Positions 12,793 to 37,679 are shown, counted from the first letter of the stretch. The stretch is DNA of 64,000 nt from Paramoeba atlantica (GCA_977017575.1 CDRNVI010000145.1:1-64000); one strand, 5' to 3'. Notes: a model not told the origin generated them from the sequence alone. Translations and numbers: made by a program.

Positions 12793-13580
12793 TTATTGGC
12801 TCTGATTTTTCTCAGCTGCAAGTGAAACAATAAGATTGGAGACTTCTGAACGTTCTTTGTTTTTGGTGAACCATGATTGAGTCAGAAAACTATCTGGTTT
12901 TTCCTCCTGGCTCAAATGCAACAGAAATTCCTCAACATATTTCATGACAAAGACTCCACAATCCACATCATTTTCCTGTTGGGGTACAATGGGTTTCACC
13001 ACTTCCAATCTTTCCAATCTCCCCAATCTCTTGGGAAGAAAGTTTGACTGAAAAAGCTTCTTGATTTTTTCAATAACAGTGTCGACACGGTGTGACAAAA
13101 ACCCTCTCATTGAATCAAGGTGCCACATTTTTTGTTCTGGGATACTAAGAACGAATAAAGACCAATGGGAATCCTTAATGTTGAAAGGAAGAAACAAATA
13201 GTCGATTTTATCATAGTCCAAGAACCAGCGTGAAAGAATTGAATAATCGTGTTCCAAATTCTCCAACTTGGTGAGAAAGAATGTAGAGAGACAGAGAAAT
13301 GAGAAGGCAGTTGTTTGTTTGTTCTACAAAATAAAATTAAAAAAAAAATTAAAAAAAAAACCCTTTAAAAAAAAAAACCCTTTAAAAAGTAAAAAAATGA
13401 AAAAACAAATACTTTCATCAAATACTTCAAGTAGAAATCAATTAGTGAATCATTCAAATAAGCGTTAGATACCAAACTATTGAGATCCTTTGGAAAAATT
13501 TCAACAGAAGACCTATCGAGATTAGGGTACAGTAAAATTCTTTTTTGTGGGTCAGAGGATAAAAACTTCTCCGTTTCAGG
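12793..13580 (-). other. Ulp1/SENP (peptidase C48) deSUMOylase-like domain
   Basis: LLYP..DLNSL..AYLNDSLIDFYLKYL, STFFLTKL, LPFNIKDSHWSL (His), HLDSM (Asp), PQQENDVDCGVFV (Gln, Cys); triad intact. Confidence 0.92.
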
Positions 13581-16500: not shown

Positions 16501-18750
16501 AGTAAGTTATTTCGACCATTCTTGACCAGATGAACATAATCAAAAAAATGTAAAACATCCTTCATTTTCGTTGAATAATCAAGAGAACCTGAAAATCCAT
16601 CAGAGCTGGTCCACATAACAACGATTTCCTTTTCCTTCATTTCATTTGAGATCTTTGTAAACACTTCAAACAGCTGGGTCCCTGTCAGCGATATTGTTGG
16701 AATAAATGTAACTGGGAATGCAATGGTACCACAATTCGAAATAAAAAAAATTTGACACACCTATTAATACTTTTGTTTTAAAACAAAAGAAAAAGAAAAA
16801 GAGAGAAACACACAAACAACAACAACTAGTGTTTTAGTTTTAGTTTTTTGTTTGTGTATATTTTTAAGGATTTATGAAAACAATTATTTGGAAAACAAAA
16901 CAAAAAAAACCTTCTTTGCAAGTTCTGGTGTATAGTCAACCAATAGATTTGGATCCAATTCGCAATCTTTTAAATATTTGTCAACAAGACCCACAAACCG
17001 TCCTGATGTACGTAAATATACAAGACCAGATCTGATCTCCATTTCATCACAAATGAGCCCACCTCCTTGAAGATCATGGCCATCGATTCGTTGTTTTTTG
17101 AGCATTTGAACAAGGATCTGAATCCGTTGGGTAACTTGAGCACCTTTATCATCAAACCATTGATAAGGCTCAACAGGAGGAATGAGTCGACGGAGAGTTG
17201 AATCAGCTGGAATACAGAGGTTTGTTGTTTTAAGATCATAATGAAAATCCCCTTTTTTTCCCTCGCATCCTTTACCACGCAAAAGATTAATCACTCGCTT
17301 ACCCCCATAAAACTGAAGTGTTGCAAAGAAATTTAAAATCTCTTGGTCCCATCGATTTCCATTTGGAGTATTGTTCAAAAGCACCTCAAGTTGGGTTTGA
17401 ATAAATTTCCCATTGAAGGAGTTCACCCATTCATCACCATACTGTTCAATGACTTGATGTACAAGAAGAGAGAGAGGATGACAAGAGGCTGGAGGCTGTT
17501 CTTGGTTCTTCTATTGGAACACAAGCAAAATAAAGTCAGTTAAAAAATCTTTACTTTTTTATCATACAGGATGATATTTTTTTAAAAAGATCTCAAAAAA
17601 AAAAGACAAACACATACCATTAAATATTCTTGATTTGCATTCCACTTTTTCAAGTATTGGATTGCTTGGTGACATGAGGGACAAAAGCGACCTGCAGCTG
17701 AAGAACTACCTTCTTGACGAACCTTCACAGAATCAAAAGAAAAAAAATGTAAATATTTCTTTTCCTATCCACCACACACACTATCCCCATTCCATCATCA
17801 TCATCACACAAATCATCCCTCATCAATAAATATTTTATCAATAAAAAGAAATAGATAAAAAAAGAGAACCCGTTCACAAAATGAAAAAAAAAGTTTTCCA
17901 GCTTGAAGAACTCCAATTACTCTGGACCCAGACTTCGATTTCTCCGCTATATATTTCCGCTTCACAACTCCATCAGAATCTGCAATTCTTTGTGCATTCT
18001 GAACAACTGTCGCAGTATCAGAGATTCCAGGGCACAAATCATGGTGATGATCATCAATAAACTCAAAAAAGGGGGAAAAGAATAATGGCTTCTCCTCCTC
18101 CTTTGTAATCATCATTGGTTCAGGACTCAACTCACTCCTGTCATGGGCAAGCCCCACCTTCTGATGTTTCTTCCTTCTTCTAAAAAAGAAAAATGGGGGT
18201 AAGAAAAATATTTCATTTTTCCCCTCAAATACACTTTTTTTTCTCAAAAAACACTCTCAGTGAACACTAAAAAAGAAAAGAACACCACTTACCTTCTGGG
18301 TGGTGGCAACCCAACTTCAAACAAAGTTGTTTGCTTCCAAGTTCTTTTTAGAAGATGATGACAAAATGATTGGATAAAGGGATCCAATCTTGGTTTGATT
18401 CCAGTGGAATGTTTCAGAGGGTATTTTTTCCAGTTCCTCACCCTTTTGACATCAAAGAGTTTAGATATCAATGGTGGGATATAAGTGGAAAATTTTGCGC
18501 TCTCAATTGATCGAATCTCTGGGCAACATTGAGAACATTTCGCGACAATCTCATTAAATGAGATCGCATCATACTCCTTCTCATCCTCACTCAACTTGTC
18601 AAAATGATGGTAAAGGGTCAGTGCAAGGTATTGGTAAACAACAAGAAACTCACGTTTCTTTGGGAGTCCATCAGGGATTAAATCCATTTTTCTCTCTTGG
18701 AAACACTGTGAAAAAGGAGAGGGAAGTTCAGTCAACTGAGAATAGTGGCA
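12793..18750 (-). CDS. Spliced polyprotein (>=1601 aa): N-terminal region, P-element-type transposase, C2H2 finger, DEDDh exonuclease, KE-rich linker, Ulp1/SENP protease; start codon unresolved upstream of 18750
   Basis: Exons 18750-18293, 18179-17870, 17764-17618, 17510-16911, 16760-16113, 15953-15825, 15631-15197, 15112-14710, 14617-13641, 13580-13413, 13323-12793. All introns are GT..AG, all phases are compatible, total 4806 nt with no internal stop. Confidence 0.85.
14200..14850 (-). other. DEDDh 3'-5' exonuclease domain
   Basis: ExoI VVWDGETTG (D ~14835); INPG|EEIPITSQAYNIHGL across the splice; ExoII IAHNGKGCD; ExoIII HDALLDA. Confidence 0.88.
15065..15225 (-). other. C2H2 zinc finger split by an intron
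   Basis: CPWEDCPKQ|YRFLGYLNNHLVKRH (C-x4-C-x12-H-x4-H), formed only by the 15197/15112 splice. Confidence 0.75.
15500..17400 (-). other. P-element/THAP9/Galileo-type transposase catalytic region
   Basis: FYGGKRVINLLR..PADSTLRR; ICDEMEIRSGLVY (D ~17047); TSSDG (D ~16600); FDYVHLVKNGRNNL; DKQNLVPV; LGTNLCENHFSVIR (E ~15853). Order and spacing fit the P-element DD-E fold. Confidence 0.85.
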
Positions 18751-19187
18751 CTAATTTTAAGAAAAAAAAGAAAGGGAAACCAAAAACTACAGAAGATCCA
18801 ATTTCAAGTGTGTTTTCACTGCAGAACTCCACCAGTGTTTGGAGGACAATGAAAGAGGGGAGAGGGTGGGGGTTGTTTCAGGGTGGAACCACACTCTGAG
18901 TGTTGATGAGATCTTTTGGTCTGGTGGAGAGTAGTCAAGAGTTTGTAGATGCTGAAAATTGGAATTTTTGCAAGTAATTTTAATTATTTGTTCACGATAT
19001 TTGTTCCTTCTCAAAGATTTGCAGGGAACAGAAACTCTCAAGGAATTTCTGATCACAACAGCACAAGCAGACCAAACTTTCAAGAACAAATGAATCACCA
19101 CAGAATCTCCAAAATCTTGACCACAAACCAATTTTCCTATCTCTCACTTGTTGTATGGTGCCAACCCTTTCGCAAACCCACAGCAGA

Positions 19188-19255
19188 TTCGCCCAGTTTC
19201 GCCCAGTTTCGCCCAGTTTCGCCCAGTTTCGCCCAGTTTCGCCCAGTTTCGCCCA
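19188..19255. repeat. 10-bp tandem repeat (GCCCAGTTTC)x6 plus partial unit
   Basis: Six perfect units at 19191-19250 followed by gccca; GC-rich in AT-rich context, upstream of the transposase gene. Confidence 0.95.
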
Positions 19256-19623
19256 ATGCCACACCAACGAAAGTTCGTTCTTTTTCGTGACCTTCGCTCA
19301 AATGAATCCCAATATTTCACTGAGATTGAAAGAATCCTATGATAATCAAAACGTCAAAATCACATTCCTGAATTGGATGTCAAAGAAACTCTTGGTCATT
19401 TGGCTTGAGTTAGAACCCCGTGAAAAATTTAGCCAAAATGGTTGCCCTAAATTTTTTTTCCTTTCCTTTCCTCCCACAAAGAAATGGATTGAAGAAATGG
19501 GTTCGATTGAGATTTTGAATCAAGGTGAATCTTTTTGAAATCTTTGTTTGTCAATGATGACATTTTATTTTACTCCTTGATCCACTCAAAATGAAAATAA
19601 ATTGATTTCTTTCTTTTGATCGC

Positions 19624-22335
19624 TCAACTCATCTCAAATAAAGAAAGAGATTGTTTGTAACAAATTTCCTAAACATTAAAAACTATGTGAGTTTTGAAAA
19701 AGAGAGAAAGAAAAGAAAATATTTGAAGAGAAAAAAACCTCAGGAACTGAACGTTTTCGTAAAAATATCAACAACAAAGAATTGTCAGAAGGATGGGGAA
19801 AATCATATCGAAATGATTGATATTGCAAAAATGATTTGATTGATTCTCCAATTTTCTGTTTTTGTTACTTTTTATTAATTCTTTTTTTCAAGACGGAATA
19901 AAACAATAAAAAATAAATGAAAAAATGAAAAAGAAACCATGAGATAAGGTAAATTAACAAATCCTTCTTCTGTTTTTGATTGATTCGCATCATATAAATA
20001 TCTTAACTCTCTCAACTGTTCAAATCATCAGTTAGTTTGAAAATAATAAAAAAAAATAAAAAAAAAATTAAAAAAAAAGAAAGAGAAAAATACCTTTGGA
20101 GCAAACCAAGGAAGAAGAGGTGGTTCTGAAGACTGGAACACATTTTGATAGTTTTTAAAATTCGATTCAGGAGATAAAATTTCATCAAACAATTCAAATC
20201 TCTTTTTGTACTATTTTTGTTTTCATCAATATTTACAACAATTTAAATTCACAAACAAAAAAATAGAAATAGAAAAAAATAAAACTCTTGAATTCAAAAG
20301 TTTCCACAATGGTTTTAAACGTTTAATTGAATATTGATTCAATCCACTTATTACAGCTGCACCTCCCTCAAAATTTCGAAGCTGTCAAAAAAGAGTCCAA
20401 AATATTAAGAAATGAGAGAGAGAGAGAAAGAAAAGAGAAATAAAAGAAGAGAGAAGAGGAGAAGAACCTTTAACAATTGAGTTGCAAGTTTGATCATAAA
20501 CATTAAATTCTGAGAACGAGTTTCAGATTCACAAAATAGGATTGATTCAACAACCATTGATGAAATTCGATTGAATATTTCACTCATTTCCTTAATATTT
20601 GGTGATCGAATATATTTCTCTTCTTTCTACATGTTTAACAGAGTCAAAGAAAGAAAAACATCAAAAGGAAAAGAAAAAAAAGGAAAAAAACCTGCCAAAA
20701 ACCATCATAAAATTCATGAGGTCTTAAATCTTTGTATCTTCGAAACATAAAGGAAGTTAACATTTGTGCAATATAGTTACTCGTTCCACAAGAACTCAAA
20801 CTCATTCTTTTCCAAATCTATTTTTTTCGACAATTAGAATTTCTGAGGAGCTTAGGAACTCAGGATCTCAGGAACTCAGGATCTCAAAGAGATCCGCCCT
20901 CACCCTCAATTCAAAGGTTTATCCAATCCAATAGAAAAAGATGTGTTTCGGGTTGGTGGGTTGTTTTAAATATTTGAAGGAAAGAAAAAGAAAAAAAGAA
21001 GAAAAAAAAGACCAAAGTTGATTCGAAAGGGGTTGATTCCAAAGAATCCAAAAATTCTTCAATTGCTCTATTTTTGACAAGAAGTCAATACCAAAGAATG
21101 AAAGAAAGAAAAAAAGAAAAAAGAAAATGAAAGAAAAACTTGGATAAAAGGGGATTAAAAGTTTGATAAAATGGTGTTAATATTCTCCTCCAAGAAAGAA
21201 CAATTTGAATAATTTGTTCTTTCTTTTCATTTTGTTGTTCCTCTCCTTCTTTTGTAATAATCATCTCTTTCATTGTTTCCAAAAGTTTAAACTATTTTTT
21301 GATTTTGAGTAAATTGGAATCGTTCATTTGTTGTTTTTTTTTGTTAAAGAGAGGGAGAGGAGAGGAGAGGAGAAAAGAGAGAAAAACCTGATCAATATCA
21401 AAAGATTGTTCAAAACCAATAAAAAAAATCTCGATTTTCTCTGGAGATAAACCAACCAAATAATTGATAATATCCAAATAAGAATCACAACGTAATTGAT
21501 CGCCTGAATCAGAAAAAGAGAGAAGAGAGGGAGAAGAAAGAGGAGGAGGAGAAGGAGGAGGAGAATCTTGAGTTGAAAAAAGAGATTTCCAACGAGGAGA
21601 AAGAGCTAGAAGTGGACTTCCAGAAGAAGGAAAATCTGATTGGGAGGAAGGATAAGAGAAAGGAGATAGGGACAGAAAAGAGAGGCGTGAACTTGAAGAA
21701 CGAGGCGATGTGCAAGATGAAGGAGAAGGAGTGAGAGCAGGAAGTGATTGGAGAGAGGGAGGAGATTTGGGTTGAGGAGAATGAGAACGAGGGCGGATCA
21801 CACCCTCTTCTTGTTGTGATGGGAGAGAAGAGATTTTTTTCATGAAAAGTTTTGCGTGGGAGCTCTTTCGGTTCTCCTCTTTGGACTTTGCTTTGGTTAT
21901 TCTGGGGTTCCCCTGGTCAAAATCTTCGTCTTTTAGTTGGAGGTACTTTGGAGGAGGAAAAGGTTCAGTGGTTGTTGTCTGTGAAAGAGGGATGAGATCA
22001 AAAAGAAAGAAAGAAAAAAAAAAAGTGGTTCATTTTTACCCAAGAAGGCGAAGATGGGACAGAGACAGAACGTTCCTTTCGTCCGGCTTTCTTTCTTTCG
22101 TCCTTTCTTTCATGGAGAGTTTTACTGCGAACTTTCTTTCTCTCTTTCTTCTTTCTTTGGGGGGGTTCTTTTCCCTCAAGGTCCGACTTCCCAAAATCCA
22201 GTTCCTAAAGATGAGAAAAAGAAAAACAAGATGAATTTTGAGGCAGAGATCAAACTGAAGGGAAAAAAAAACTCTCACCAAAGAAACAGAAAGTGGGCTG
22301 GATGGGAGAGTGTTTTGTCTCGTTCGTTTTTCCAT
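19624..22335 (-). CDS. RasGEF (REM + CDC25) gene, copy 4, apparently complete
   Basis: ATG 22335 (MEKRTRQNTL..SVSL|gt), exons ELDFGK..SPSW| and TTTTEPF..LRCDSYLDIINYL; conserved CDC25 exons; last exon EICYKQSLSLFEMS* with stop at 19624-19626. Confidence 0.88.
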
Positions 22336-23272: not shown

Positions 23273-26200
23273 ATGAATTGTGTTTTTCTTTGTCAGGAGA
23301 GGAGTTCTTCTTCTTCTTCTGGCTTTGCTTTTGATGGTGGTGGAGGTCAAAAACGAAGATTGTTTTTTTTGACCTTTTTTGTGGTTGTTCTTCTCATTTC
23401 GCAAGGAGAGGGAGGTATTTTGACCATACAAGATAACAATCAAGATCAAGCTGCGCCAACCGCAGTCTTCTATTATCGAATTGAATCGAACGAGTCAATT
23501 CCCCAAGCTATCCTCAATCTTCCAACTGGAAGTTGGTCTTTTCCAACGGAAGATGAACCTCTTTGTGTCTCCGATGATCCTGCTTCATGTCCCATCACAG
23601 AGATTTCAATCACCAATTGGTTTGTTTTTTTGTTTTTTGTTTTTTTTTGTTTTTTTGTTTTTTTGTTTTGTTTTTTTTTGTTTTTTTTTGTTTTTTTTGT
23701 TTTTTATTTCTTATTTTCTTGGTCTCCCAATTTCTGTTTTTTTTTACCTTTGAACAAAAGCTTTTCTGTCCACCAAAATATTTCGTGTTAATGTTTCAAA
23801 AAGGGATGATGTTGAACAAGAGTATTATCACCAATCGATTGAATTTATCACTCCATACGAAATGATCAATTTTTTGGGTTATGGTAAGTTTTTCTTTTGT
23901 GAAAAATAGAATTTTTGTTGGGTTCTCAAAACAATTAATCTTCCTTTTTCCACAGTCCAATTTACTGGTGATCTCAGGAGTGTTAAAAATGACATTGGTG
24001 AGGATTTTTGATTACCAATACCTACTTTAGTCTCTTGATCATTTTTTTGATGTTTTTTTTTTAGAATCTCTTCGTTTAATGTATCGTAGTGGAACTGAAA
24101 CAATCGGAGGGAATGAGTATGAAGGAAATGAAATTTCAGCAGGACCCGTCTATGTTACCGAAGATGGAATCCTTCGAAACAGTTGGGCTGTTACAACCGA
24201 TCAAAGTTACGATTTCGATGAACCAGTTGAAGATTGTTCGACTTCTGCTCTTTGTCCCCTGAATACTCCAATCCCTTGTCTTCTGAATAAGGATTGTTCT
24301 GCGAACGAGTGTCCGTTGTTACCTCAATGGTGGGAAGAAGCCACTTTTTTCGATGAGTATGGGTGTTATGCTCGACAAGGAGCTGATTACAAAACTGACC
24401 CAGCCAGAGACGAAGCAGTGGTTGAAGCAATCACAGGAAGAAAACAATGTTGTTTGCCAGAGCTTCCCAATCAATTCCCAACTGAAGAGTATTATCCTTA
24501 CAATAGTTATGGAGATACAAAGAAAGAAATCCCTTGTTCTTTGTTACCTTATTGTTCTGATGATGTATGGTCTGAAGATCCTTTTCATACAACGATGCCT
24601 GATGGAATGGATTATACATACTTTTATTTGGATAATGATGGTCGTATTTCGAATCTTGATCCATCAGATATTGTTGTTGAAGATGGAAGTGACTTTGTTC
24701 CTGACTTAAGAAGGAAGAAGTCTGCGATGTGTGATCCTGATATCTGGCCTCCTCGCCCTCGAAACGGACCTCGTTTGGATTTCTTCATTTCTGGGTATCG
24801 ATCACTTACTGAAGAAGATTTACCTTTTCCAATCCAATGGGGAGGTACTGGTTCAAATACTATCGATGGTCTGAAACAAACAATGCAAATTGGAACAATT
24901 GGATTCAAAAACTATGTTTCTGATGATGATTGGAGTGTGAAAGCTCTTGGTTTGAATCATGGTGGGACTGGAGGAACAACAGCTGAAGAAGCACGCCAAA
25001 ACCTCGTGTTGGGTCGATTAGCTCGTTTTGATACAATCGATGATTCCAATTGGAATGGTCGTGCTCTTGGTTTGTTGAATGGTGGGACTGGAAGTCGAGA
25101 ACAAGAAACTGCTCGTCGAAATTTAGGTCTTGGTCTCTCTTCTGTTGAAGGAATTGATTATGAAATTGAATTCAATCAACAAATTAGTGGTATTCAAGTT
25201 ACTGTTGATGCTCTTGGTGCTCTTGCTTTTGAAGATACCATTCGACCTGCACTTTGGAGTGGAGAGACCCTTCCTCTTGTTGATGGTGGTGTTGATGCCA
25301 GTAATGCGATGGATGCTCGTTACAATCTCCTTCTTGGTCAAATGGCTCTGTATGATTATATTGGAGATAATAATTGGATGGGACCTCCTCTTTCTGTTGC
25401 GAATGGAGGAACTGGTTCAACTTCTGTTGAAGAGATTGGTGATACTCTTGAACTTGGAGATTTAGCTTATCTTGATTATGCAACAGATTTTGTGTGGGGT
25501 GGGGATCCTTTAAGTATTGAAAATGGTGGAGTTGAAGCTACCAATGTTATTGATTCTCGTTTCAATCTTCTTCTTGGAGCTCTTGCGACTTTTGATTATG
25601 TTGGAAATGAACAATGGTTAGGACCTCCTCTTTCCATTGAAAATGGAGGAACTGGTGCGAACACTCTCGAACAAGCTGTTGATAATTTCGAACTTGGTCA
25701 AATGGCTTTTGTGGATGGAGTTGCTGATTATCTTTGGTCTGGTGATTCTCTCACAATGGTCAATGGGGGTCTTGAAGCAAACAATGCGATTGATTCTCGT
25801 TTCAATCTTCTTCTTGGTCATTTATCAACTCTCGATTATGTTGGGAATGAACAATGGCTTGGATCTCCTCTTTCAATCGAAAATGGAGGAACTGGAGCCA
25901 ACACTTTCGAACAAGTTGTTGATAACTTTGAATTGGGAGAACTTGCCTTTTTGGATGTTGTTGGAGATTCATTATGGAGTGGTGATTCTCTTAGTATTGA
26001 AAATGGTGGGTTCGATGCATCCAATGTGATTGATGCTCGTTACAATCTTCTTCTTGGTTATTTATCAACTCTCGATGCTGTTGGAAATGACCAATGGCTT
26101 GGATCTCCTCTTTCGATTGAAAATGGAGGAACTGGAGCCAATACTTTTGAAGAAGCTGTTGATAATTTCGAGTTGGGAGAACTTGCCTTTTTGGATGTTG

Positions 26201-29200
26201 TTAGAGATTCATTGTGGAGTGGTGATTCTCTTAGTATCGAAAATGGAGGACTTGAAGCATCCAATGTGATTGATTCTCGTTACAACCTCCTTCTTGGTGC
26301 TTTATCAACTCTCGATTATGTTGGAAACGAACAATGGCTTGGATCTCCTCTTTCCATTGAAAATGGAGGAACTGGAGCCAATACTTTCGAACAAGTTGTT
26401 GACAATTTCGAGTTGGGAGAACTTGCCTTCTTAGACGTTGTTAGAGATTCTTTATGGAGTGGTGATTCTCTTAGTATTGAACATGGAGGACTTGAAGCAT
26501 CCAATGTGATTGATTCTCGTTACAATCTTCTTCTTGGTCATTTATCAACTCTCGATTATGTTGGAAACGAACAATGGCTTGGATCTCCTCTTTCAATCGA
26601 AAATGGAGGAACTGGAGCAAATACTTTCGAACAAGTTGTTGATAACTTTGAGTTGGGAGAACTTGCCTTTTTGGATGTTATTGGAGATTCATTATGGAGT
26701 GGTGATTCTCTTGGTATTGAGAATGGTGGTTTTGAAGCATCCAATGTGATTGATGCTCGTTACAATCTTCTTCTTGGTGCTTTGTCAACCCTCGATTATG
26801 TTGGAAACGAACAATGGCTTGGATCTCCTCTTTCGATTGAAAACGGAGGAACTGGAGCCAATACTTTCGAACAAGTTGTTGATAATTTCGAGTTAGGAGA
26901 ACTTGCCTTTTTGGATGTTATTGGGGACTCTTTATGGAGTGGTGATTCTCTTGGTCTTGAAAATGGAGGACTTGAAGCATCCAATGTGATTGATGCTCGT
27001 TACAATCTTCTTCTTGGTGCTTTATCAACTCTCGATTATGTTGGAAATGAACAATGGCTTGGATCTCCTCTTTCGATTGAAAATGGAGGAACTGGAGCAA
27101 ATACTTTCGAACAAGTTGTTGATAACTTTGAGTTGGGAGAACTTGCCTTTTTGGATGTTGTTAGAGATTCATTGTGGAGTGGTGATTCTCTTGGTATTGA
27201 AAATGGTGGGTTTGAAGCATCAAATGTGATTGATGCTCGTTACAATCTTCTTCTTGGTGCTTTGTCAACCCTCGATTATGTTGGAAATGAACAATGGCTT
27301 GGATCTCCTCTTTCAATCGAAAACGGAGGAACTGGAGCAAATACTTTTGAACAAGTTGTTGATAATTTTGAGTTGGGAGAACTTGCCTTTTTGGATGTTA
27401 TTGGGGACTCTTTATGGAGTGGTGATTCTCTTAGTATTGAAAATGGTGGGTTTGAAGCATCCAACGTGATTGATGCTCGATATAATCTTCTTCTTGGTGC
27501 TTTATCAACTCTCGATTACGTTGGAAATGAACAATGGCTTGGATCTCCTCTTTCCATCGAAAATGGAGGAACTGGAGCCAATACTTTCGAACAAGTTGTT
27601 GATAACTTTGAGTTGGGAGAACTTGCCTTTTTGGATGTTATTGGAGATTCTTTATGGAGTGGTGACCCTTTAACTTTCGAAAATGGAGGACTTGAAGCAA
27701 ACAATGTGATTGATTCTCGTTACAATCTTCTTCTTGGTGCTTTATCAACTCTCGATTATGTTGGGAATGAACAATGGCTTGGATCTCCTCTTTCAATCGA
27801 AAATGGAGGAACTGGAGCCAATACTTTCGAACAAGTTGTTGATAACTTTGAGTTGGGAGAACTTGCCTTTTTAGATGTTGTTGGAGATTCATTATGGAGT
27901 GGTGACTCTCTTAGTATTGAAAATGGTGGGTTTGAAGCATCCAATGTGATTGATGCTCGTTACAATCTTCTTCTTGGTTATTTATCAACTCTTGATTATG
28001 TTGGAAATGACCAATGGCTTGGATCTCCTCTTTCGATTGAAAATGGAGGAACTGGAGCAAATACTTTTGAAGAAGCTGTTGATAATTTTGAGTTGGGAGA
28101 ACTTGCCTTCTTTGACGTTGTTAGAGATTCATTGTGGAGTGGTGATTCTCTTAGTATCGAAAATGGTGGGTTTGAAGCATCTAATGTGATTGATGCTCGT
28201 TACAATTTGAATCTTGGATATCTCTCAACCTACGATTATTTCGGAGATAACCTTTGGATTGGTCCTCCTCTTTCAGTGGACAATGGAGGAACTGGAGTGA
28301 CCACATATTATGATCTCACAGATCGACTTGAACTTGGAGATTTGGCTTACTTAGATTATGTGATGGATTTCTATTATGGTGGTGATCCACTCTCAATCGA
28401 AAATGGTGGTTTTGAAGCTTCCAATGTTCTTGATGCTCGTTACAATTTGAATCTTGGATATCTTGCAACATATGATTATCTTGGAGATAACCTTTGGATT
28501 GGTCCTCCTTTGGGAGTCAACAATGGAGGAACTGGAGTGACCTCTTATTATGATTTGACTGATGAACTTGAACTTGGAGAGTTGGCTTACTTAGATTATG
28601 TGATGGATTATTATTACGGTGGTGATCCACTCTCAATCGAAAATGGTGGTTTTGAAGCTTCCAATGTTCTTGATGCTCGTTACAATTTGAATCTTGGATA
28701 TCTTGCAACATACGATTATCTTGGAGATAACCTTTGGATTGGTCCTCCTTTGGGTGTTGATAATGGAGGAACTGGAGTGACCTCTTATTATGATTTGACC
28801 GATGAACTTGAACTTGGAGAGTTGGCTTACATGGATTATGTGATGGATTATTATTATGGTGGTGATCCACTCTCAATCGAAAACGGTGGGTTTGAAGCTT
28901 CTAATGTTCTTGATGCTCGATACAATTTGAATCTTGGATATCTCTCAACCTTTGATTACCTTGGGGATAACCTTTGGATCGGTCCTCCATTGAGTGTTAA
29001 TAATGGAGGAACTGGAGTGACAACCTATTATGATTTGACTGATGCTCTTGAGCTTGGAGATTTAGCTTATTTAGATTATGTAATGGATTTCTATTATGGT
29101 GGTGAACCACTCTCAATCGAAAATGGGGGTTTTGAAGCTTCCAACATTCTCGATGCTCGTTACAACCTTAATCTTGGATATCTCTCGACCTTTGATTACC

Positions 29201-32200
29201 TTGGGGATAACCTTTGGATTGGTCCTCCATTGGGTGTTAACAATGGAGGAACTGGAGTGACAACCTATTATGATTTAACTGATGTTCTTGAACTTGGAGA
29301 TTTAGCTTATTTAGATTATGTAATGGATTTCTATTATGGTGGTGATCCTCTTTCGATCAAAAATGGGGGTTTTGAAGCTTCCAACATTCTTGATGCTCGT
29401 TACAATCTTAATCTCGGATATCTTTCGACTTATGATTATATCGGAGATGATCTTTGGATTGGTCCTCCTTTGGGTGTTGATAATGGAGGAACTGGAGTTT
29501 CTTCTTACTATGATTTGACTGACGCTCTTGAACTTGGAGAGTTGGCTTACATGGATTATGTGATGGATTATTATTATGGTGGTGAACCACTCTCAATCGA
29601 AAATGGTGGGTTCGATGCATCAAATGTGATTGATGCTCGTTACAATCTTCTTCTTGGTTATTTATCAACTCTCGATGCTGTTGGAAATGACCAATGGCTT
29701 GGAGCTCCTCTTTCAATCGAAAATGGAGGAACTGGAGCCAACACTTTTGAAGAAGCTGTTGATAACTTTGAATTGGGAGAACTTGCCTTTTTGGATGTCG
29801 TTGGAGACTCTTTATGGAGTGGTGATTCTCTTAGTATTGAAAATGGTGGTTTTGAAGCTTCCAACATTCTTGATGCTCGTTACAATCTTAATCTCGGATA
29901 TCTTTCGACTTTTGATTACATTGGAGATAACCTTTGGATTGGCCCTCCTTTGGGTGTTGATAATGGAGGAACTGGTGTTTCTTCTTATTATGATTTAACT
30001 GACGCTCTTGAACTTGGTGAATTAGCTTACTTAGATTATGTAATGGATTATTATTATGGTGGAGACGAACTATCCATTGTGAATGGTGGAACTCAAGCAA
30101 CTAATGTTTTTGATGTTCGATACAATTTGAATCTTGGATATCTCTCGACTTACGATTACATTGGAGATAACCTTTGGATTGGCCCTCCTTTGGGCATCAA
30201 CAATGGAGGAACTGGAGTGACCACTTATTATGAGTTAACTGACGAACTTGAACTTGGAGAGTTAGCTTATTTAGATTATGTGATGGATTTCTATTACAGT
30301 GGAGAAGATTTGTCTCGATACAATGGAGGAACTGAAGCTTCCAATGTTCTTGATGCTCGTTACAATCTTAATCTTGGGTATCTCTCGACCTTTGATTACA
30401 TTGGAGATAACCTTTGGATTGGCCCTCCTCTTTCAGTGGACAATGGGGGAACTGGTGTTTCTTCTTATTATGAGTTGACCGATGCTCTTGAACTTGGAGA
30501 GTTGGCTTATTTAGATTATGTGATGGATTTCTATTACAGTGGCGAAGATTTGTCTCGATACAATGGAGGAACTGAAGCTTCCAATGTTCTTGATGCTCGT
30601 TACAATCTTAATCTTGGGTATCTCTCAACCTTTGATTACATTGGGGATAATCTTTGGATTGGTCCTCCTCTTTCAGTGGACAATGGAGGAACTGGTGTTT
30701 CTTCTTATTACGAGTTAACTGACGCTCTTGAACTTGGAGAGTTAGCTTATTTGGATTATGTAATGGATTATTATTATGGTGGAGATGGACTCTCCATTGT
30801 AAATGGTGGAACTCAAGCAACCAATGTTCTTGATGTTCGATACAATCTTAATCTTGGATACCTCTCAACATATGATTACATTGGAGATAACCTTTGGATT
30901 GGTCCTCCTTTGGGCATCAACAATGGAGGAACTGGAGTGACCACTTATTATGAGTTAACTGACGCTCTTGAACTTGGAGAGTTGGCTTATTTGGATTATG
31001 TGATGGATTATTATTATGGTGGAGACGAACTCTCAATTGTGAATGGTGGAACTCAAGCAACCAATGTTCTTGATGTTCGTTACAATCTCAATCTTGGGTA
31101 TCTCTCAACCTACGATTACATTGGAGATAACCTTTGGATTGGCCCTCCTTTGGGCATCAACAATGGAGGAACTGGAGTGACCACTTATTATGAGTTGACT
31201 GACGAACTTGAACTTGGAGAGTTGGCCTATTTGGATTATGTGATGGATTTCTATTACAGTGGAGAAGATTTGTCTCGATACAATGGAGGAACTGAAGCTT
31301 CTAATGTTATTGATGCTCGATACAATCTTAATCTTGGATATCTTTCAACATATGATTACATTGGAAATGATCTTTGGATTGGTCCTCCTTTGGGTGTTGA
31401 TAATGGGGGAACTGGTGTTTCTTCTTATTATGATTTAACTGATGTTCTTGAACTTGGAGAGTTAGCTTATTTGGATTATGTGATGGATTATTATTATGGT
31501 GGAGACGAACTTTCGATTGTGAATGGAGGAACTGAAGCTGCCAATGTTCTTGATGTTCGTTACAATCTTAATCTGGGGTATCTTTCAACATCTGATTACA
31601 TTGGGGATAATCTTTGGATTGGTCCTCCTCTTTCAGTTGATAATGGAGGAACTGGAGTTTCTTCTTATTATGAGTTAACTGATGTTCTCGAACTTGGAGA
31701 GTTGGCTTATTTGGATTATGTGATGGATTATTATTATGGTGGAGACGGACTCTCCATTGTAAATGGTGGAACTCAAGCAACCAATGTTCTTGATGTTCGT
31801 TACAATTTGAATCTTGGGTATCTCTCAACTTACGATTACATTGGAGATAACCTTTGGATCGGTCCTCCTCTTTCAGTTGATAATGGAGGAACTGGAGTTT
31901 CTTCTTATTATGAGTTAACTGATGTTCTTGAACTTGGAGAGTTGGCTTATTTGGATTATGTGATGGATTATTATTATGGCGGTGATGAACTATCCATTGT
32001 GAATGGAGGAACTGAAGCTGCCAATGTTCTTGATGTTCGTTACAATCTTAATCTTGGGTATCTCTCAACCTTTGATTACATTGGAGATAATCTTTGGATT
32101 GGTCCTCCTCTTTCAGTGGACAATGGAGGAACTGGAGTTTCTTCTTATTATGAGTTGACTGATGTTCTTGAACTTGGAGAGTTGGCTTATTTAGATTATG

Positions 32201-35200
32201 TGATGGATTATTATTATGGTGGAGACGAACTCTCCATTGTAAATGGAGGAACTGAAGCTTCCAATATTCTTGATGTTCGATACAATCTTAATCTTGGATA
32301 CCTCTCAACCTTTGATTACATTGGAGATAACCTTTGGATTGGTCCTCCTCTTTCAGTTGATAATGGAGGAACTGGTGTTTCTTCTTATTATGAGTTAACT
32401 GACGCTCTTGAACTTGGAGAGTTGGCTTATTTAGATTATGTAATGGATTATTATTATGGTGGAGACGGACTCTCCATTGTGAATGGAGGAACTCAAGCAA
32501 TGAATGTTCTTGATGCTCGTTACAATTTGAATCTTGGATATCTTTCAACTTATGATTATATCGGAGATAACCTTTGGATTGGTCCTCCTTTGGGTGTTGA
32601 TAATGGAGGAACTGGAGTGACATCTTATTATGAGTTGACTGATGCTCTTGAACTTGGTGAATTAGCTTACATGGATTATGTAATGGATTATTATTATGGT
32701 GGTGATGAACTATCCATTGTAAATGGAGGAACTGAAGCTTCCAATGTTCTTGATGCTCGATACAATCTTAATCTTGGGTATCTCTCGACTTACGATTACA
32801 TTGGAGATAACCTTTGGATTGGTCCTCCTCTTTCAGTGGACAATGGAGGAACTGGTGTTTCTTCTTATTACGAGTTGACTGATGTTCTTGAACTTGGAGA
32901 GTTGGCTTATTTGGATTATGTGATGGATTATTATTATGGTGGAGACGAACTTTCTCTGGTGAATGGTGGAACTCAAGCAACTAATGTTCTTGATATTCGT
33001 TACAATCTTAATCTTGGGTATCTCTCGACTTACGATTACATTGGAAATAACCTTTGGATTGGTCCTCCTCTTTCAGTGGACAATGGAGGAACTGGTGTTT
33101 CTTCTTATTATGAGTTAACTGACGCTCTTGAACTTGGAGAGTTGGCCTATTTGGATTATGTAATGGATTTCTATTATGGTGGAGACGGACTCTCCATTGT
33201 AAATGGTGGAACTCAAGCAATGAATGTTCTTGATATTCGTTACAATCTTAATCTTGGATACCTCTCAACCTTTGATTACATTGGAGATAACCTTTGGATT
33301 GGCCCTCCTTTGGGTGTTGATAATGGAGGAACTGGAGTGACATCTTATTATGAGTTGACTGACGTTCTTGAACTTGGTGAATTAGCTTACATGGATTATG
33401 TAATGGATTATTATTATGGTGGCGATGAACTATCCATTGTAAATGGAGGAACTGAAGCTTCCAATGTTCTTGATGTTCGTTACAATCTCAATCTTGGATA
33501 TCTCTCGACTTACGATTACATTGGAGATAACCTTTGGATTGGTCCTCCTCTTTCAGTGGACAATGGGGGAACTGGTGTTTCTTCTTATTATGAGTTGACT
33601 GATGTTCTTGAACTTGGAGAGTTGGCTTATTTGGATTATGTGATGGATTATTATTATGGTGGAGACGGACTCTCCATTGTAAATGGAGGAACCCAAGCTC
33701 CCAATGTTCTTGATATTCGTTACAATCTTAATCTTGGGTATCTCTCAACTTATGATTACATTGGAGATAACCTTTGGATTGGTCCTCCTTTGGGTGTTGA
33801 TAATGGAGGAACTGGAGTTTCTTCTTATTATGAGTTAACTGATGCTCTTGAACTTGGTGAATTAGCTTATTTGGATTATGTAATGAATTTCTATTATGGT
33901 GGAGACGGACTCTCCATTGTAAATGGTGGAACCCAAGCAACCAATATTCTTGATGTTCGTTACAATCTTAATCTTGGATACCTCTCAACCTTTGATTACA
34001 TTGGGGATAATCTTTGGATTGGTCCTCCTCTTTCAGTGGACAATGGAGGAACTGGTGTTTCTTCTTATTACGAGTTAACTGATGCTCTTGAACTTGGAGA
34101 ATTAGCGTATTTGGATTATGTGATGGATTATTATTATGGTGGCGATGAACTATCCATTGCGAATGGAGGAACTGAAGCTGCCAATGTTTTCGATGTTCGT
34201 TACAATTTGAATCTTGGGTATCTCGCAACCTTTGATTACATTGGGGATAATCTTTGGATTGGTTCTCCTCTTTCAGTGGACAATGGAGGAACTGGTGTTT
34301 CTTCTTATTATGAGTTAACTGATGCTCTTGAACTTGGAGAGTTGGCTTATTTGGATTATGTGATGGATTATTATTATGGTGGTGATGAACTATCCATTGT
34401 GAACGGTGGGACCCAAGCAACCAATGTTCTTGATGTTCGTTACAATCTTAATCTTGGATACCTCTCAACATATGATTACATTGGAGATAATCTTTGGATT
34501 GGTCCTCCTTTGGGTGTTGATAATGGAGGAACTGGGGTGACATCCTATTATGAGTTAACTGATGCTCTTGAACTTGGAGAGTTGGCTTATTTAGATTATG
34601 TGATGGATTATTATTATGGTGGAGACGAACTCTCAATTGTAAATGGAGGAACCCAAGCAACCAATGTTCTTGATGTTCGTTACAATCTCAATCTTGGATA
34701 TCTCTCAACCTTTGATTACATTGGAGATAATCTTTGGATTGGTCCTCCTCTTTCAGTTGATCATGGAGGAACTGGAGTTTCTTCTTATTATGAGTTAACT
34801 GATGTTCTTGAACTTGGAGAGTTGGCTTATTTGGATTATGTGATGGATTTCTATTACAGTGGAGAAGATTTGTCTCGATACAATGGAGGAACTGAAGCTT
34901 CCAATGTTCTTGATGCTCGTTACAATCTTAATCTTGGATACCTCTCGACAGTTGATTACATTGGGGATAACCTTTGGATTGGTTCTCCTCTTTCAGTGGA
35001 CAATGGAGGAACTGGTGTTTCTTCTTATTATGACCTAACTGATGCTCTTGAACTTGGAGAGTTAGCTTATTTAGATTATGTAATGGATTATTATTATGGT
35101 GGTGATGAACTATCCATTGTGAACGGTGGGACCCAAGCAACCAATGTTCTTGATGTTCGTTACAATCTTAATCTTGGATACCTCTCAACATATGATTACA

Positions 35201-37299
35201 TTGGAGATAATCTTTGGATTGGTCCTCCTTTGAGTGTTGATAATGGAGGAACTGGAGTGACATCCTATTATGAGTTAACTGACGCTCTTGAACTTGGAGA
35301 GTTGGCTTATTTAGATTATGTAATGGATTATTATTATGGTGGAGACGAACTCTCAATTGTAAATGGAGGAACCCAAGCAACCAATGTTCTTGATGTTCGT
35401 TACAATCTCAATCTTGGATATCTCTCAACCTTTGATTACATTGGAGATAATCTTTGGATTGGTCCTCCTCTTTCAGTTGATCATGGAGGAACCGGAGTTT
35501 CTTCTTATTATGAGTTAACTGATGTTCTTGAACTTGGAGAGTTGGCTTATTTGGATTATGTGATGGATTTCTATTACAGTGGAGAAGATTTGTCTCGATA
35601 CAATGGAGGAACTGAAGCTTCCAATGTTCTTGATGCTCGATACAATCTTAATCTTGGATACCTCTCGACAGTTGATTACATTGGGGATAATCTTTGGATT
35701 GGTTCTCCTCTTTCAGTGGATAATGGAGGAACTGGTGTTTCTTCTTATTATGAGTTAACTGATGCTCTTGAACTTGGAGAGTTAGCTTATTTAGATTATG
35801 TAATGGATTATTATTATGGTGGTGATGAACTCTCCATTGCAAATGGTGGAACTGAAGCTTCCAGTGTTATTGATGTTCGTTACAATTTGAATCTTGGGTA
35901 TCTCTCAACATATGATTATATTGGAGATAATCTCTGGATTGGTCCTCCTTTGGGTGTGGACAATGGAGGAACTGGTGTTTCTTCTTATTATGACCTAACT
36001 GATGAACTTGAACTTGGAGAATTAGCTTACTTAGATTACGTGATGGATTATTATTATGGTGGTGATGAACTCTCCATTGTAAATGGTGGAACTCAAGCAA
36101 CCAATGTTCTTGATGTTCGATACAATCTTAATCTTGGGTATCTTTCAACATATGATTACATTGGAGATAACCTTTGGATTGGTCCTTCTCTTTCAGTGGA
36201 CAATGGGGGAACTGGAGTTTCTTCTTATTACGATTTAACTGATGTTCTTGAACTTGGAGAGTTGGCTTATTTGGATTATGTGATGGATTATTATTATGGT
36301 GGAGACGAACTTTCTATTGCAAATGGAGGGACCCAAGCAACCAATGTTCTTGATGTTCGTTACAATCTCAATCTTGGATATCTCTCAACCTACGATTACA
36401 TTGGAGATAACCTTTGGATTGGTCCTCCTCTTTCAGTGGACAATGGGGGAACTGGTGTTTCTTCTTATTATGAGTTAACTGATGCTCTTGAACTTGGAGA
36501 GTTAGGTTATTTAGATTATGTGATGGATTATTATTATGGTGGTGATGAACTATCCATTGCAAATGGAGGAACTGAAGCTTCCAGTGTTATTGATGTTCGA
36601 TACAATCTTAATCTTGGATATCTCTCAACATATGATTACATTGGAGATAATCTTTGGATTGGTCCTTCTCTTTCAGTGGACAATGGGGGAACTGGAGTTT
36701 CTTCTTATTCCGAGTTAACTGATGCTCTTGAACTTGGAGAGTTAGCTTATTTAGATTATGTGATGGATTATTATTATGGCGGTGATGAACTCTCAATGTT
36801 TAATGGTGGAACTGATGCTACGAAAGCAGTGGATCGAAGATATACCGCGCTTTTGGGACATCTTGCCACAGAAGATTATCTTTCGAATGATCTTTGGATT
36901 GGAACACCTCTCTCTGTGACGAATGGTGGAACTGGTGCTTCAACTCCATCAGAAGCTCAAGAGAATCTTTACATTGGATCAGTTGGGTTGTTGTGGTCTC
37001 TTGATAATGCTCATTGGAATTCTGGGCCACTTTCAATCGAAAATGGTGGGTCTGCTGGTTCTGATCTGACCGAGGCAAGAGAAAATTTGGGTGTCAGTTT
37101 ATTAGGTTTCAATAATGAAGTGAGTGATTTGATTTGGGATTATTATGGTCCTCCTCTTGGAGTTGAGAATGGAGGAACAGGTGCGGAGGATTTGCAATTG
37201 GGATGGAAGAATCTGGGTCTCTTTACGGAAGGTTTTATGGATCTATTTTGTGATATGTGGTTTGAGTATTATGAAGTTGATCTTTGTGATAATTCGTAG
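23273..37299 (+). CDS. Giant (~4567 aa) acidic repeat protein, probably secreted: hydrophobic leader, Cys-rich N-terminal region, ~103 GG-motif 40-aa units
   Basis: Exons 23273-23619, 23804-23883, 23956-23997, 24065-37299 join in phase (13704 nt); leader RLFFLTFFVVVLLISQGEG; the 4406-aa track ORF is exon 4. Confidence 0.88.
24841..37200 (+). repeat. Coding tandem array, 120-nt sub-unit alternating to a 240-nt (80-aa) period
   Basis: GG motif recurs every 120 nt without an indel from 25285 to 37045; three earlier units at 24841, 24961, 25081 and a last one at 37171. Confidence 0.95.
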
Positions 37300-37679
37300 A
37301 TTTAAAAACACAAAAAAAATAAAATCTGGTTCAACGAAAAAAATTCACTCAAAGGACAAGAGAAAGCCAGAAAAAATGAAAAAATAAACCTTTGTTTCTG
37401 AAACTGATACTCCCTTTGATTTGCTTTTTTATTTTTCTATTTTATTATTTTCCCCCTCTCTCCCACACCACCACCCCAAATAAAATAAACAATTTCTTTT
37501 TGAAAAAAGAAGATTTCCTTTTCAATTTTGTGGAGGTTGATCCATTCTAGGTTTTTTGAGTTCAATTTCATCACCAAAACCATATTCAGCTCCAATCTTT
37601 TTCTTTTTACTTTCTCTTTCTTCTTCTCCTTCTCTTTGTTCTTCTTCTATTTGTTCTTCTTTTCCATTTGATTTAATCT

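What the first reader, a model, noticed from the sequence alone, without database searches (positions are those of the whole stretch)
23273..37299. 4.5-kaa eukaryotic surface or secreted protein made of ~103 phage-tail-fibre-like GGTG repeats
Seen: signal-like leader, Cys-rich N-terminal region, then 40-aa units W/Y-x-G-x-x-L-S-x-x-NGG(T)-x11-L-x-LG-x-L. The terminal units read LNHGGTGGTTAEEARQNLVLG and NGGTGASTPSEAQENL. From recall, GGTGATTA..ARxNLGLG is a common phage tail-fibre shaft motif; about 100 copies in a spliced eukaryotic gene is unusual. The array is very rich in Asp, Glu and Tyr. Inference: a long fibrous, possibly trimeric and cation-binding, cell-coat or adhesion filament built from a phage-derived module.
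Basis: partly seen in the sequence, partly recalled or inferred. Interest (0 to 1): 0.8.

Follow-up and report, generated by a model that had tools for sequence, protein, structure and literature searches.

The report
Giant eukaryotic protein of phage-fibre repeats
A spliced eukaryotic gene encodes a 4,567-residue, very acidic, tyrosine-rich secretory protein made of 103 copies of a 40-residue repeat otherwise typical of bacteriophage tail fibres. It is probably a borrowed viral building block used to make a very long extracellular filament.

Summary
A 4-exon gene (23273-37299, +) with three GT-AG introns in consistent phase encodes 4,567 aa. Exon 4 alone is a 4,406-codon open frame. It holds exactly 103 units, and 100 of 102 spacings are exactly 40 aa. 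Two unit types alternate, giving a 240-nt super-repeat.

Every unit scores 19-52 bits against a profile of 240 units from other, mostly phage or bacterial, proteins; shuffled units reach at most 6.6 bits. PHROG tail-fibre families, Kuravirus tail fibres, SU10 gp12 and R-pyocin fibres all match. No Pfam or NCBIfam model covers the repeat.

The array is under purifying selection (dN/dS 0.17-0.3, dS about 0.5). A second, independent assembly copy keeps the leader, the splice sites and the reading frame.

Derived features are net charge -600, 9.9% Tyr (0.1% in relatives) and no N-glycosylation sequon in 4,000 aa (about 39 expected). There is no receptor-binding head, chaperone domain or second membrane segment.

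Best reading: a secreted or N-terminally anchored fibre, probably trimeric, with a structural coat or matrix role. Trimer formation, cation binding, expression and the host organism were not tested. No comparable giant array appeared among 1.84 billion representative proteins.

The parts
23273..23619 (+). Exon 1 (115 codons + 2 nt): start codon, leader, first part of the mature N-terminal region (one N-E-S sequon, 2 Cys)
   Evidence: In L001 the frame is kept despite three in-frame indels in the leader, with 9 synonymous to 3 non-synonymous changes. Read-through into the intron hits a stop there.
23357..23401 (+). Hydrophobic leader core (residues 29-43, RLFFLTFFVVVLLIS) after KRR: a signal peptide or a type-II signal anchor
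   Evidence: Kyte-Doolittle 15-residue mean up to 2.57. It is the only such stretch in the protein; the maximum elsewhere is 1.0 over 19 residues. Cleavage was not tested.
23620..23803 (+). Intron 1, 184 nt, GT..AG, T/G-rich low complexity
   Evidence: It is 36% divergent or gapped against L001, versus 0.7-6% in the exons.
23804..23883 (+). Exon 2 (80 nt)
   Evidence: Phase fits exon 1 (TG+G = Trp). Against L001 there are 4 synonymous changes and 1 conservative change.
23884..23955 (+). Intron 2, 72 nt, GTAAGT..CAG
23956..23997 (+). Exon 3 (42 nt)
   Evidence: Phase is consistent. It is identical in L001.
23998..24064 (+). Intron 3, 67 nt, GTGAGG..TAG
24065..37299 (+). Exon 4, including the TAG stop at 37297-37299
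24079..24801 (+). Cys-rich acidic N-terminal domain (exon-4 residues 1-241; 11 Cys), an orphan domain
   Evidence: No Pfam, PHROG or NCBIfam hit. The only hit in two protein searches is its own fragment P0001. Nothing was found in JGI metagenome contigs.
24802..25161 (+). Units 1-3. Units 2-3 carry the phage-type GGTG..A(R)xNL.LG string; composition is not yet Tyr-rich
   Evidence: (22.5, 49.5 and 38.7 bits).
25162..25245 (+). 28-residue insert between units 3 and 4 (the one 68-aa spacing)
25246..37251 (+). Units 4-103: two 40-aa unit types alternate. One has GGTG plus LELGELAYLDYVMD. The other has GG(T/L/F)(E/D/Q)A, RYNLxLG and DYYYGGD. Together they form a 240-nt super-repeat with an early block and a later block
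37252..37296 (+). 15-residue C-terminal tail after unit 103. It holds 1 Cys; the other C-terminal Cys is the last residue of unit 103. No head domain
37318..37323 (+). AATAAA, 19 nt after the stop (another at 37383): a likely polyadenylation signal
   Evidence: This is sequence only, with no transcript evidence.

Best explanation
This is a resident, selectively maintained eukaryotic gene. Its product enters the secretory pathway through an N-terminal hydrophobic leader, either a cleaved signal or a type-II anchor. The product is an extremely long extracellular fibre.

The fibre is built from 103 tandem copies of the 40-residue shaft repeat of tailed-phage and tailocin fibres. That module most likely came from a bacterium or phage and was then amplified inside the gene.

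By analogy with every characterised carrier of the motif, three parallel chains probably intertwine. Each unit would add one helix-plus-turn layer, giving a rod a few tenths of a micrometre long. This length is inferred by scaling the pyocin Shaft, 70 residues for about 93 A.

The Cys-rich N-terminal domain would form the membrane- or matrix-proximal base. There is no distal receptor-binding head, so the rod itself is the functional part. It is a polyanionic, Tyr-studded structural filament of a cell coat, envelope or matrix. It may bind divalent cations or be cross-linked through tyrosines.

Shown: the gene structure, the repeat homology, purifying selection, the leader and the derived composition. 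Inferred: secretion, trimer formation, length and role.
For: Gene model and eukaryotic context.

Repeat count and register.

Homology to phage fibre repeats:
- phrog_5481 (tail fiber) 1.7e-22, plus seven further tail-fibre PHROGs.
- tblastn to Kuravirus tail fibres.
- PDB 7z47_D, SU10 gp12.
- Pyocin fibres 6cl5 and 6cl6.
- All 103 units score 19-52 bits against the external unit profile; shuffles reach at most 6.6 bits.
- Hit P0007 sits directly after a 697-aa ORF that follows the SU10-type adaptor gene in a phage contig. P0151 lies two genes from a tail-collar gene.
- Named relatives include 'Tail fiber protein [Caudoviricetes sp.]', with Peptidase_S74 partners.

Trimer analogy: SU10 gp12 and the pyocin fibre are trimers. 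The pyocin Shaft is an interdigitated helix-plus-turn trimer (PMC9509320, PMC6116203). An AlphaFold2 monomer of 3 units with a 116-row alignment gives pLDDT 84.6 but pTM 0.40. That is a locally confident, extended chain of short helices with no globular or solenoid fold. Its BFVD matches are all Caudovirales proteins, mostly tail or fibre proteins, down to E 1.5e-5. Its top PDB rows are the pyocin fibres, though not significantly.

Selection: dN/dS is 0.17-0.3 with dS about 0.5 among super-repeats, and no two units are identical. Between the two copies, exon 4 shows 9 synonymous changes to 1 non-synonymous.

Secretory route: a single N-terminal hydrophobic segment. There are 0 N-x-S/T sequons in 4,000 aa against 39 expected (minimum 24 in 500 shuffles), while 42% of external units carry one.

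Derived chemistry: D+E 15.6%, K+R 1.6% and Y 9.9%, against 5.7, 3.1 and 0.1% in external units.
Against: No oligomer prediction or experiment was possible.

The part of SU10 gp12 that carries the motif is not resolved; only 90 N-terminal residues were built. The pyocin match covers a single motif at E 0.003.

The first monomer model, made with an alignment of the protein's own units only, was uninformative (pLDDT 35).

Half of the units have lost the conserved Arg and Asn of A-R-x-N-L-G, reading LTDALELG instead. Their packing may therefore differ from phage fibres.

There is no transcript or protein evidence.

The leader has a 28-residue N-region, so its status as signal or anchor is uncertain.

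Sequon absence is only moderately strong. About 0.9% of non-synonymous changes would create a sequon, and the units are not independent.

The organism is unknown, so no cell-biological context exists.
Confidence: 0.55

Rival explanations
1. The chain, source and secretory route are the same, but the chain does not trimerise. It acts as a monomeric, highly charged, extended polymer: a mucin-like or biomineral-associated acidic matrix protein. The old fibre repeat serves only as a spacer scaffold.
For: Net charge is -600 with 1.6% K+R, which would oppose tight packing of three chains without counter-ions. One unit type has lost the conserved Arg and Asn. The monomer model is extended with low pTM.
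Against: Gly, Leu, Trp and Asp positions are strictly conserved, with 83 invariant columns in 240. dN/dS of 0.17-0.3 indicates a defined packed structure rather than a loose polymer. Exact 40-aa spacing with no indels across 100 units is typical of a geometric repeat. All characterised carriers of the motif are trimers.
Confidence: 0.2
2. The fibre is not a surface coat. It is the stored content of a regulated secretory organelle (an extrusome-like or envelope-forming vesicle) and is discharged as a thread or wall layer.
For: It has an ER-type leader and no other membrane segment or GPI-like tail. High Tyr content (9.9%) would suit oxidative cross-linking after release. Giant repetitive acidic proteins are common in such organelles (general knowledge, not tested here).
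Against: Nothing in the window points to such an organelle. The neighbours are ankyrin genes and transposon ORFs. The organism is unknown.
Confidence: 0.15
3. This is an artefact or dead DNA: a collapsed or expanded satellite, a pseudogene, or bacterial or phage contamination joined to eukaryotic sequence.
For: The array length rests on one assembly. The independent contig L001 ends inside unit 6.
Against: The frame is open over 4,406 codons (P about 1e-129). Units differ by 5-25% at the DNA level with dS about 0.5 and dN/dS below 0.3. Introns and the leader are conserved in a second copy. GC3 of 0.23 fits the AT-rich host region. The eukaryotic flanks are continuous on both sides.
Confidence: 0.04

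Closest known systems
40-residue GGTG...ARxNLGLG repeat of Caudoviricetes long tail fibres (E. coli phage SU10/Kuravirus gp12, PDB 7z47; PHROG 5481, 1591, 12321, 6578, 10316)
   Same: The period (40 aa) and the conserved string W-x-G-x-x-L-x-(I/V)-x-NGGTG-A-x-x-A-x-x-AR-x-NL-x-LG-x-L are the same. Best identity of any window unit to an external unit is 40-57%.
   Different: Phage proteins carry 2-8 units between a virion-attachment N-terminus and a receptor-binding or chaperone C-terminus. Here there are 103 units, an orphan Cys-rich N-terminal domain, no C-terminal domain, a secretory leader and introns. Composition has shifted from Ala/Ser/Thr-rich to Asp/Glu/Tyr-rich, and there are no N-glycosylation sequons.
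R-type pyocin fibre Shaft domain (PA0620; PDB 6CL5, 6CL6, 6CT8)
   Same: It carries one copy of the motif (LPLARGGLGANTAAGARNNIG), matched through relative P0004 at E 0.003-0.01. These entries are also the top, non-significant, Foldseek PDB rows for the 3-unit model. It is a solved example of an interdigitated trimeric helix-plus-turn shaft (PMC6116203).
   Different: It has a single motif, an HxH iron site and a lectin foot. None of these is present here.
MYRF intramolecular-chaperone (Peptidase_S74) domain: the known case of a phage fibre or spike module domesticated in eukaryotes (PMC3742443, PMC8326128)
   Same: A phage tail-fibre or tailspike-derived, trimer-forming module sits inside a eukaryotic protein of the secretory or ER membrane system. 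Several prokaryotic relatives of the present repeat carry Peptidase_S74.
   Different: It is a different module. No S74 domain is present here. MYRF uses it once for trimerisation and self-cleavage, not as a structural array.
Metagenomic proteins P0002 (2,120 aa) and P0003 (795 aa)
   Same: They are the best non-self hits (388 and 246 bits). Both have an N-terminal signal-like segment, acidic arrays (D+E 13-14%) and low sequon density. P0002 shares the LG-x-LAYxDY flavour. P0002 lies beside a Myb-domain ORF, and P0003 is on a transcript-like contig with AATAAA and an A-run.
   Different: They have about 25-40 and about 9 units. They possess a shared C-terminal domain (phrog_34132-like) that the window protein lacks. 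They lack its N-terminal domain and are far less Tyr-rich. Their eukaryotic origin is not established.

Membership tests
Phage/tailocin tail-fibre proteins carrying the 40-aa GGTG..NLGLG shaft repeat | Repeat motif with a 40-residue period and a significant profile match to tail-fibre families | tested here: met
   PHROG tail-fibre families to 1.7e-22. All 103 units score 19-52 bits against the external unit profile, with shuffles at most 6.6 bits. 100 of 102 spacings are exactly 40 aa.
Phage/tailocin tail-fibre proteins carrying the 40-aa GGTG..NLGLG shaft repeat | Encoded in a phage, prophage or tailocin tail module | tested here: not met
   It is a spliced gene with three GT-AG introns, flanked by multi-exon ankyrin genes and eukaryotic transposon ORFs. 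There are no phage genes in the 64 kb.
Phage/tailocin tail-fibre proteins carrying the 40-aa GGTG..NLGLG shaft repeat | N-terminal virion or baseplate attachment domain and C-terminal receptor-binding or chaperone domain | tested here: not met
   The N-terminal 241 aa have no Pfam, PHROG or NCBIfam hit and no homologue. The C-terminus is 15 residues.
Phage/tailocin tail-fibre proteins carrying the 40-aa GGTG..NLGLG shaft repeat | Parallel homotrimer with interdigitated chains | not testable with these tools
   Only monomer AlphaFold2 was available. The monomer is extended, with pLDDT 84.6 and pTM 0.40.
Pfam phage-fibre repeat families (e.g. PF03406 Phage_fiber_2, PF12789 PTR) | Match to the Pfam model at or near the gathering score | tested here: not met
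   No phage-fibre Pfam family appeared at E <= 1 for three 400-aa pieces. None appeared at E <= 0.01 for relatives P0004 and P0006. The repeat has no Pfam or NCBIfam model.
Eukaryotic secretory-pathway (secreted or type-II anchored) proteins | N-terminal hydrophobic signal or anchor segment | tested here: met
   Residues 29-43 score KD 2.57 after KRR, and this is the only hydrophobic segment. It is conserved, with in-frame indels, in L001. The cleavage site was not predicted because no SignalP-type tool was available.
Eukaryotic secretory-pathway (secreted or type-II anchored) proteins | Extracellular-type features: Cys-rich domain and control of N-glycosylation sites | tested here: inconclusive
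   There are 11 Cys in 218 residues. There are 0 sequons in 4,000 aa against 39 expected. This is suggestive, not proof of ER transit.
Expressed protein-coding gene | Purifying selection on the coding frame | tested here: met
   dN/dS is 0.17-0.3 among units. Between the two copies there are 22 synonymous to 5 non-synonymous changes over exons 1-4.
Expressed protein-coding gene | Transcript or peptide evidence | not testable with these tools
   No transcriptome or proteome of the unknown organism was at hand.

The most novel reading that the evidence does not exclude
Eukaryotes have captured the shaft repeat of phage tail fibres and turned it into a secreted structural polymer. In this organism it has been amplified to 103 units, giving a sub-micrometre, polyanionic, tyrosine-rich trimeric filament. 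It has also been adapted to the ER through loss of all N-glycosylation sequons. P0002 and P0003 hint that other, unrelated eukaryotic lineages carry signal-peptide versions of the same module. That would make this an undescribed eukaryotic family of phage-derived surface fibres.
Probability: 0.4. Interest if true: 0.8.

Novelty: new variant of a known kind. Interest (0 to 1): 0.68.

Why it matters
Domestication of phage structural modules by eukaryotes is known from very few cases, with the MYRF chaperone domain as the classic one. Here the borrowed part would be the load-bearing shaft itself. It is multiplied about 20-fold beyond any phage fibre seen in these searches and chemically remodelled.

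If the fibre is trimeric it would be a natural, genetically encoded rod of defined length, with about 40 residues per step. That is of interest for fibre-folding studies and protein materials. It would also be a clear marker of bacterium- or phage-to-eukaryote transfer followed by adaptation to the secretory pathway.

The work also shows that a very common 40-residue tail-fibre repeat still has no Pfam or NCBIfam model and no resolved multi-unit structure.

Tried and rejected
- Pfam and NCBIfam scans of the array, the N-terminal domain and exon 1 gave nothing relevant.
- AlphaFold2 on 6 units with an alignment of the protein's own units only gave pLDDT 35 and was unusable. It was replaced by a 3-unit model with 84 external rows.
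- Foldseek against the PDB gave only non-significant rows.
- An exact look-up of the 4,406-aa product found it is not on record.
- The N-terminal domain found only its own fragment in the word-indexed search. It found nothing in JGI metagenome contigs. A 240-aa piece of the derived array also found nothing there.
- The organism could not be named. Neighbouring ORFs are ankyrin repeats, a Ulp1 peptidase, a TNP-like transposase and orphans. There is no rRNA, tRNA or Rfam hit.
- Full-text searches found no paper describing this repeat in a eukaryote or the motif by name.
- Contamination and satellite readings were rejected on introns, selection and flanks.
- The window is not taken for human sequence.
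- The joined spliced protein was neither built nor searched. Exons were handled separately by reference. Exon 1 and exon 4 were searched. Exon 2 (26 codons) and exon 3 (13 codons) are too short for a meaningful search.
Full report

Yes. The + strand holds an open frame of 4,406 codons at 24079-37299. With the base composition of that stretch a stop is expected every 15 codons or so. The chance of such an open frame is about 1e-129.

Upstream, ORF 23273-23791 starts with ATG and runs into a T/G-rich low-complexity tract. Reading the DNA and checking coordinates gives a four-exon model:
- exon 1: 23273-23619
- exon 2: 23804-23883
- exon 3: 23956-23997
- exon 4: 24065-37299

The introns are 184, 72 and 67 nt and begin and end GTTTGT..AG, GTAAGT..AG and GTGAGG..AG. 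The phases fit at all three junctions. The CDS is 13,704 nt, or 4,567 residues plus stop. AATAAA follows the stop by 19 nt.

I did not build or search the joined protein. Exons were treated one by one by reference. Exons 2 and 3 (26 and 13 codons) are too short to search.

**2. The repeat**

Anchoring on [NDHW]GG gives exactly 103 units. Of the 102 spacings, 100 are exactly 40 residues, one is 42 and one is 68, the last being a 28-residue insert after unit 3.

Two unit types alternate, giving the 240-nt period that TRF reports with no indels:
- One type has the consensus DNLWIGPPLSVDNGGTGVSSYYELTDaLELGELAYLDYVM.
- The other has the consensus DYYYGGDeLSIVNGGTEASNVLDARYNLNLGYLSTYDYIG.

**3. Is it a live gene?**

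Comparison of the 48 super-repeats shows:

| Comparison | dN | dS |
|---|---|---|
| Within the later block | 0.10 | 0.58 |
| Within the first block | 0.13 | 0.46 |
| Between blocks | 0.40 | 0.95 |

No two units are identical. The array is therefore old and under purifying selection. It is not a recently blown-up satellite.

An independent assembly contig, L001 (ENA ERZ24900291), carries the 5' 2.3 kb of the same gene. Its features are:
- In exon 4 there are 9 synonymous changes and 1 non-synonymous change over 1,545 nt.
- In exon 1 there are 9 synonymous and 3 non-synonymous changes, plus three in-frame indels confined to the leader.
- Exon 3 is identical.
- All GT/AG sites are kept.
- Intron 1 is 36% divergent or gapped, and read-through of intron 1 hits a stop.

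L001 ends inside unit 6. The length of the array therefore rests on the window's assembly alone.

**4. Context**

Nothing in the window is phage-like or bacterial. There is no tRNA or Rfam hit.

Downstream (38-64 kb, minus strand) lie at least seven tandem units of about 3.55 kb of a multi-exon ankyrin-repeat gene. Upstream lie four copies of another unit of about 3.55 kb. These are interrupted by about 7.7 kb holding a Ulp1 C48 peptidase (2e-22), a TNP-like transposase RNase-H fragment and an RNase_T-like ORF.

GC3 of the fibre gene is 0.23, in line with the AT-rich region. This is a eukaryotic nuclear locus. I could not name the organism. It is not human sequence.

**5. What are the units related to?**

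Pfam and NCBIfam have no model for them. PHROGs does. A 400-residue piece hits phrog_5481 'tail fiber protein' at 1.7e-22, and seven further tail-fibre PHROGs score better than 1e-7 or weaker.

Other matches:
- tblastn against 50,697 phage records finds tail fibres of SU10-like Kuraviruses at 30-37% identity.
- In the PDB, the array profile and single sequences hit 7z47_D, the SU10 long-tail-fibre protein gp12.
- A close relative, P0004, also hits the R1/R2 pyocin fibres 6cl5, 6cl6 and 6ct8.

An exhaustive HMMER pass over 1.84 billion representatives gave 625 hits at E <= 0.001. Among the hits, P0007 sits directly after a 697-aa ORF that follows the SU10-type adaptor gene in a phage contig. 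P0151 lies two genes from a tail-collar gene. Named relatives include 'Tail fiber protein [Caudoviricetes sp.]', and several carry Peptidase_S74. Bacterial MAGs of several phyla carry the repeat too.

I cut 240 units in register from 122 of these other proteins and built a profile. All 103 window units score 19-52 bits, while 515 shuffled units reach at most 6.6 bits. The external consensus is N.nWSGTDLAVANGGTGASTAAGARTNLGLGSLATLSTIN, with the same 40-residue period.

The homology claim is therefore solid. The module is overwhelmingly prokaryotic or viral. The direction of transfer, into the eukaryote, is an inference from that distribution.

**6. What is different here?**

- **Scale.** The next longest arrays among the 150 best hits have about 25-40 units (P0002, P0011).
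- **Architecture.** The 241-residue Cys-rich N-terminal domain has no relative except its own fragment. After unit 103 only 15 residues follow. There is no attachment domain, no receptor-binding head and no chaperone.
- **Chemistry.** The array has D+E 15.6%, K+R 1.6% and Y 9.9%, against 5.7, 3.1 and 0.1% in external units. Net charge of the exon-4 product is -600. One unit type has replaced A-R-x-N-L-G-L-G by L-T-D-x-L-E-L-G.
- **Sequons.** The 4,000-residue array has no N-x-S/T sequon. Shuffling within units gives 39 on average, and never fewer than 24 in 500 trials. By contrast, 42% of external units carry one, usually the N-W-S at the start of the unit. Only about 0.9% of non-synonymous changes would create a sequon, so this is moderate evidence. 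It still fits a protein that must fold in the ER without glycans in its packed core.

**7. Leader**

Exon 1 has one strongly hydrophobic stretch, residues 29-43 (15-residue Kyte-Doolittle mean 2.57), preceded by KRR. Nothing else in the protein exceeds 1.0 over 19 residues. It may be a cleaved signal with a long N-region or a type-II anchor. I had no predictor for cleavage.

**8. Structure**

AlphaFold2 on six units with only the protein's own units as alignment failed (pLDDT 35). With three units and 84 external rows (A2) the model has pLDDT 84.6 but pTM 0.40. Each unit has a one-turn helix at the NGG site, a 7-residue helix over the A..AR.NL part and a 4-residue helix after LG. There is no globular or solenoid packing.

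That is the behaviour expected of one chain taken out of an intertwined fibre. Foldseek against BFVD returns only Caudovirales proteins, mostly tail or fibre proteins, down to 1.5e-5. Against the PDB the top rows are the pyocin fibres, but not significantly.

From the literature:
- SU10 gp12 and the pyocin fibre are trimers.
- The pyocin Shaft is an interdigitated 'helix-plus-turn' trimer of 70 residues per 93 A (PMC6116203).
- The part of SU10 gp12 that carries the motif was not resolved (PMC9509320).

There is therefore still no solved multi-unit structure of this repeat. Scaling the Shaft figure gives roughly 0.5 um for 103 units. This is an inference with wide error.

**9. Most likely mechanism**

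The chain enters the ER by its leader. Three chains probably intertwine in parallel from unit to unit. The disulfide-rich N-terminal domain forms the base at the membrane or matrix. The two C-terminal Cys may cap or link the far end.

The rod itself, polyanionic and studded with about 420 tyrosines per chain, would be the functional surface. It could serve as a coat, envelope or matrix filament, possibly bridged by cations or cross-linked through tyrosines.

Rivals are a non-trimeric acidic polymer, the content of a discharge or wall-forming vesicle, and an artefact or pseudogene. The last is unlikely on the selection and intron evidence.

**10. Known or new?**

The repeat is a known, if unnamed, phage-fibre element. 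The precedent for a phage fibre or spike module in eukaryotes is MYRF's S74 chaperone domain (PMC3742443).

Full-text searches found no description of this repeat in a eukaryote. No comparable protein appeared in the exhaustive search.

Two metagenomic proteins with signal-like N-termini and acidic arrays may be further eukaryotic carriers, but this is unproven:
- P0002 lies beside a Myb ORF on a 60% GC contig.
- P0003 is on a transcript-like contig with AATAAA and an A-run.

I rate it a new variant of a known kind, with interest 0.68.

Noticed in passing
window 25246-37245 (array): The 4,000 residues hold no N-x-S/T sequon, where about 39 are expected. The ancestral N-W-S at the unit start has been replaced by L-W-I or Y-Y-G. 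This may be adaptation of a prokaryotic module to the eukaryotic ER.
   Followed up: yes
window 38000-64000, minus strand: At least seven tandem units of about 3.55 kb (one spacing of about 4.66 kb) of a multi-exon ankyrin-repeat gene, 60-99% identical. A 393-nt tandem duplication lies inside one unit (53653-54437).
   Followed up: partly
window 1300-21500: Four copies of a different unit of about 3.55 kb with orphan ORFs (for example 6494-7243, 10058-10969 and 21295-22029, minus strand). It has no similarity to the ankyrin units.
   Followed up: partly
window 11700-19300: An insertion of about 7.7 kb between copies 3 and 4 of the upstream unit. It carries a Ulp1 C48 peptidase (12796-13323, minus, 2e-22), a TNP-like transposase RNase-H piece (16887-17510, minus), an RNase_T-like ORF (13584-14651, minus) and a 333-aa orphan ORF (11737-12735, plus) with an H-x-D...H pattern. 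It is probably a transposon.
   Followed up: partly
L001 1-845 and 846-2084: In the second copy of the gene (ENA ERZ24900291 ctg2125l) the sequence upstream of exon 1 matches the ankyrin units that lie downstream in the window. About 1.2 kb has no match in the window. This is a structural difference between haplotypes, strains or paralogous loci.
   Followed up: partly
P0002 (L002 4636-10998) and P0003 (L006 3-2390): These are signal-peptide-bearing proteins with acidic arrays of the same repeat. They share a C-terminal domain of about 250 residues ending in a coiled-coil-like helix, matched only by phrog_34132 (unknown function). They are possibly eukaryotic.
   Followed up: partly
window 254-520; 23621-23717: An (AG)n microsatellite of about 140 copies, and a T/G-rich (TTTGTTTT)n tract that fills most of intron 1. 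The tract is length-variable between the two copies.
   Followed up: no
window 25246-36765: The array has higher-order structure. Super-repeat 19 is of the early-block type but embedded in the later block. Super-repeats 39-41 are about 95% identical to 42-44, a 720-nt duplication.
   Followed up: partly
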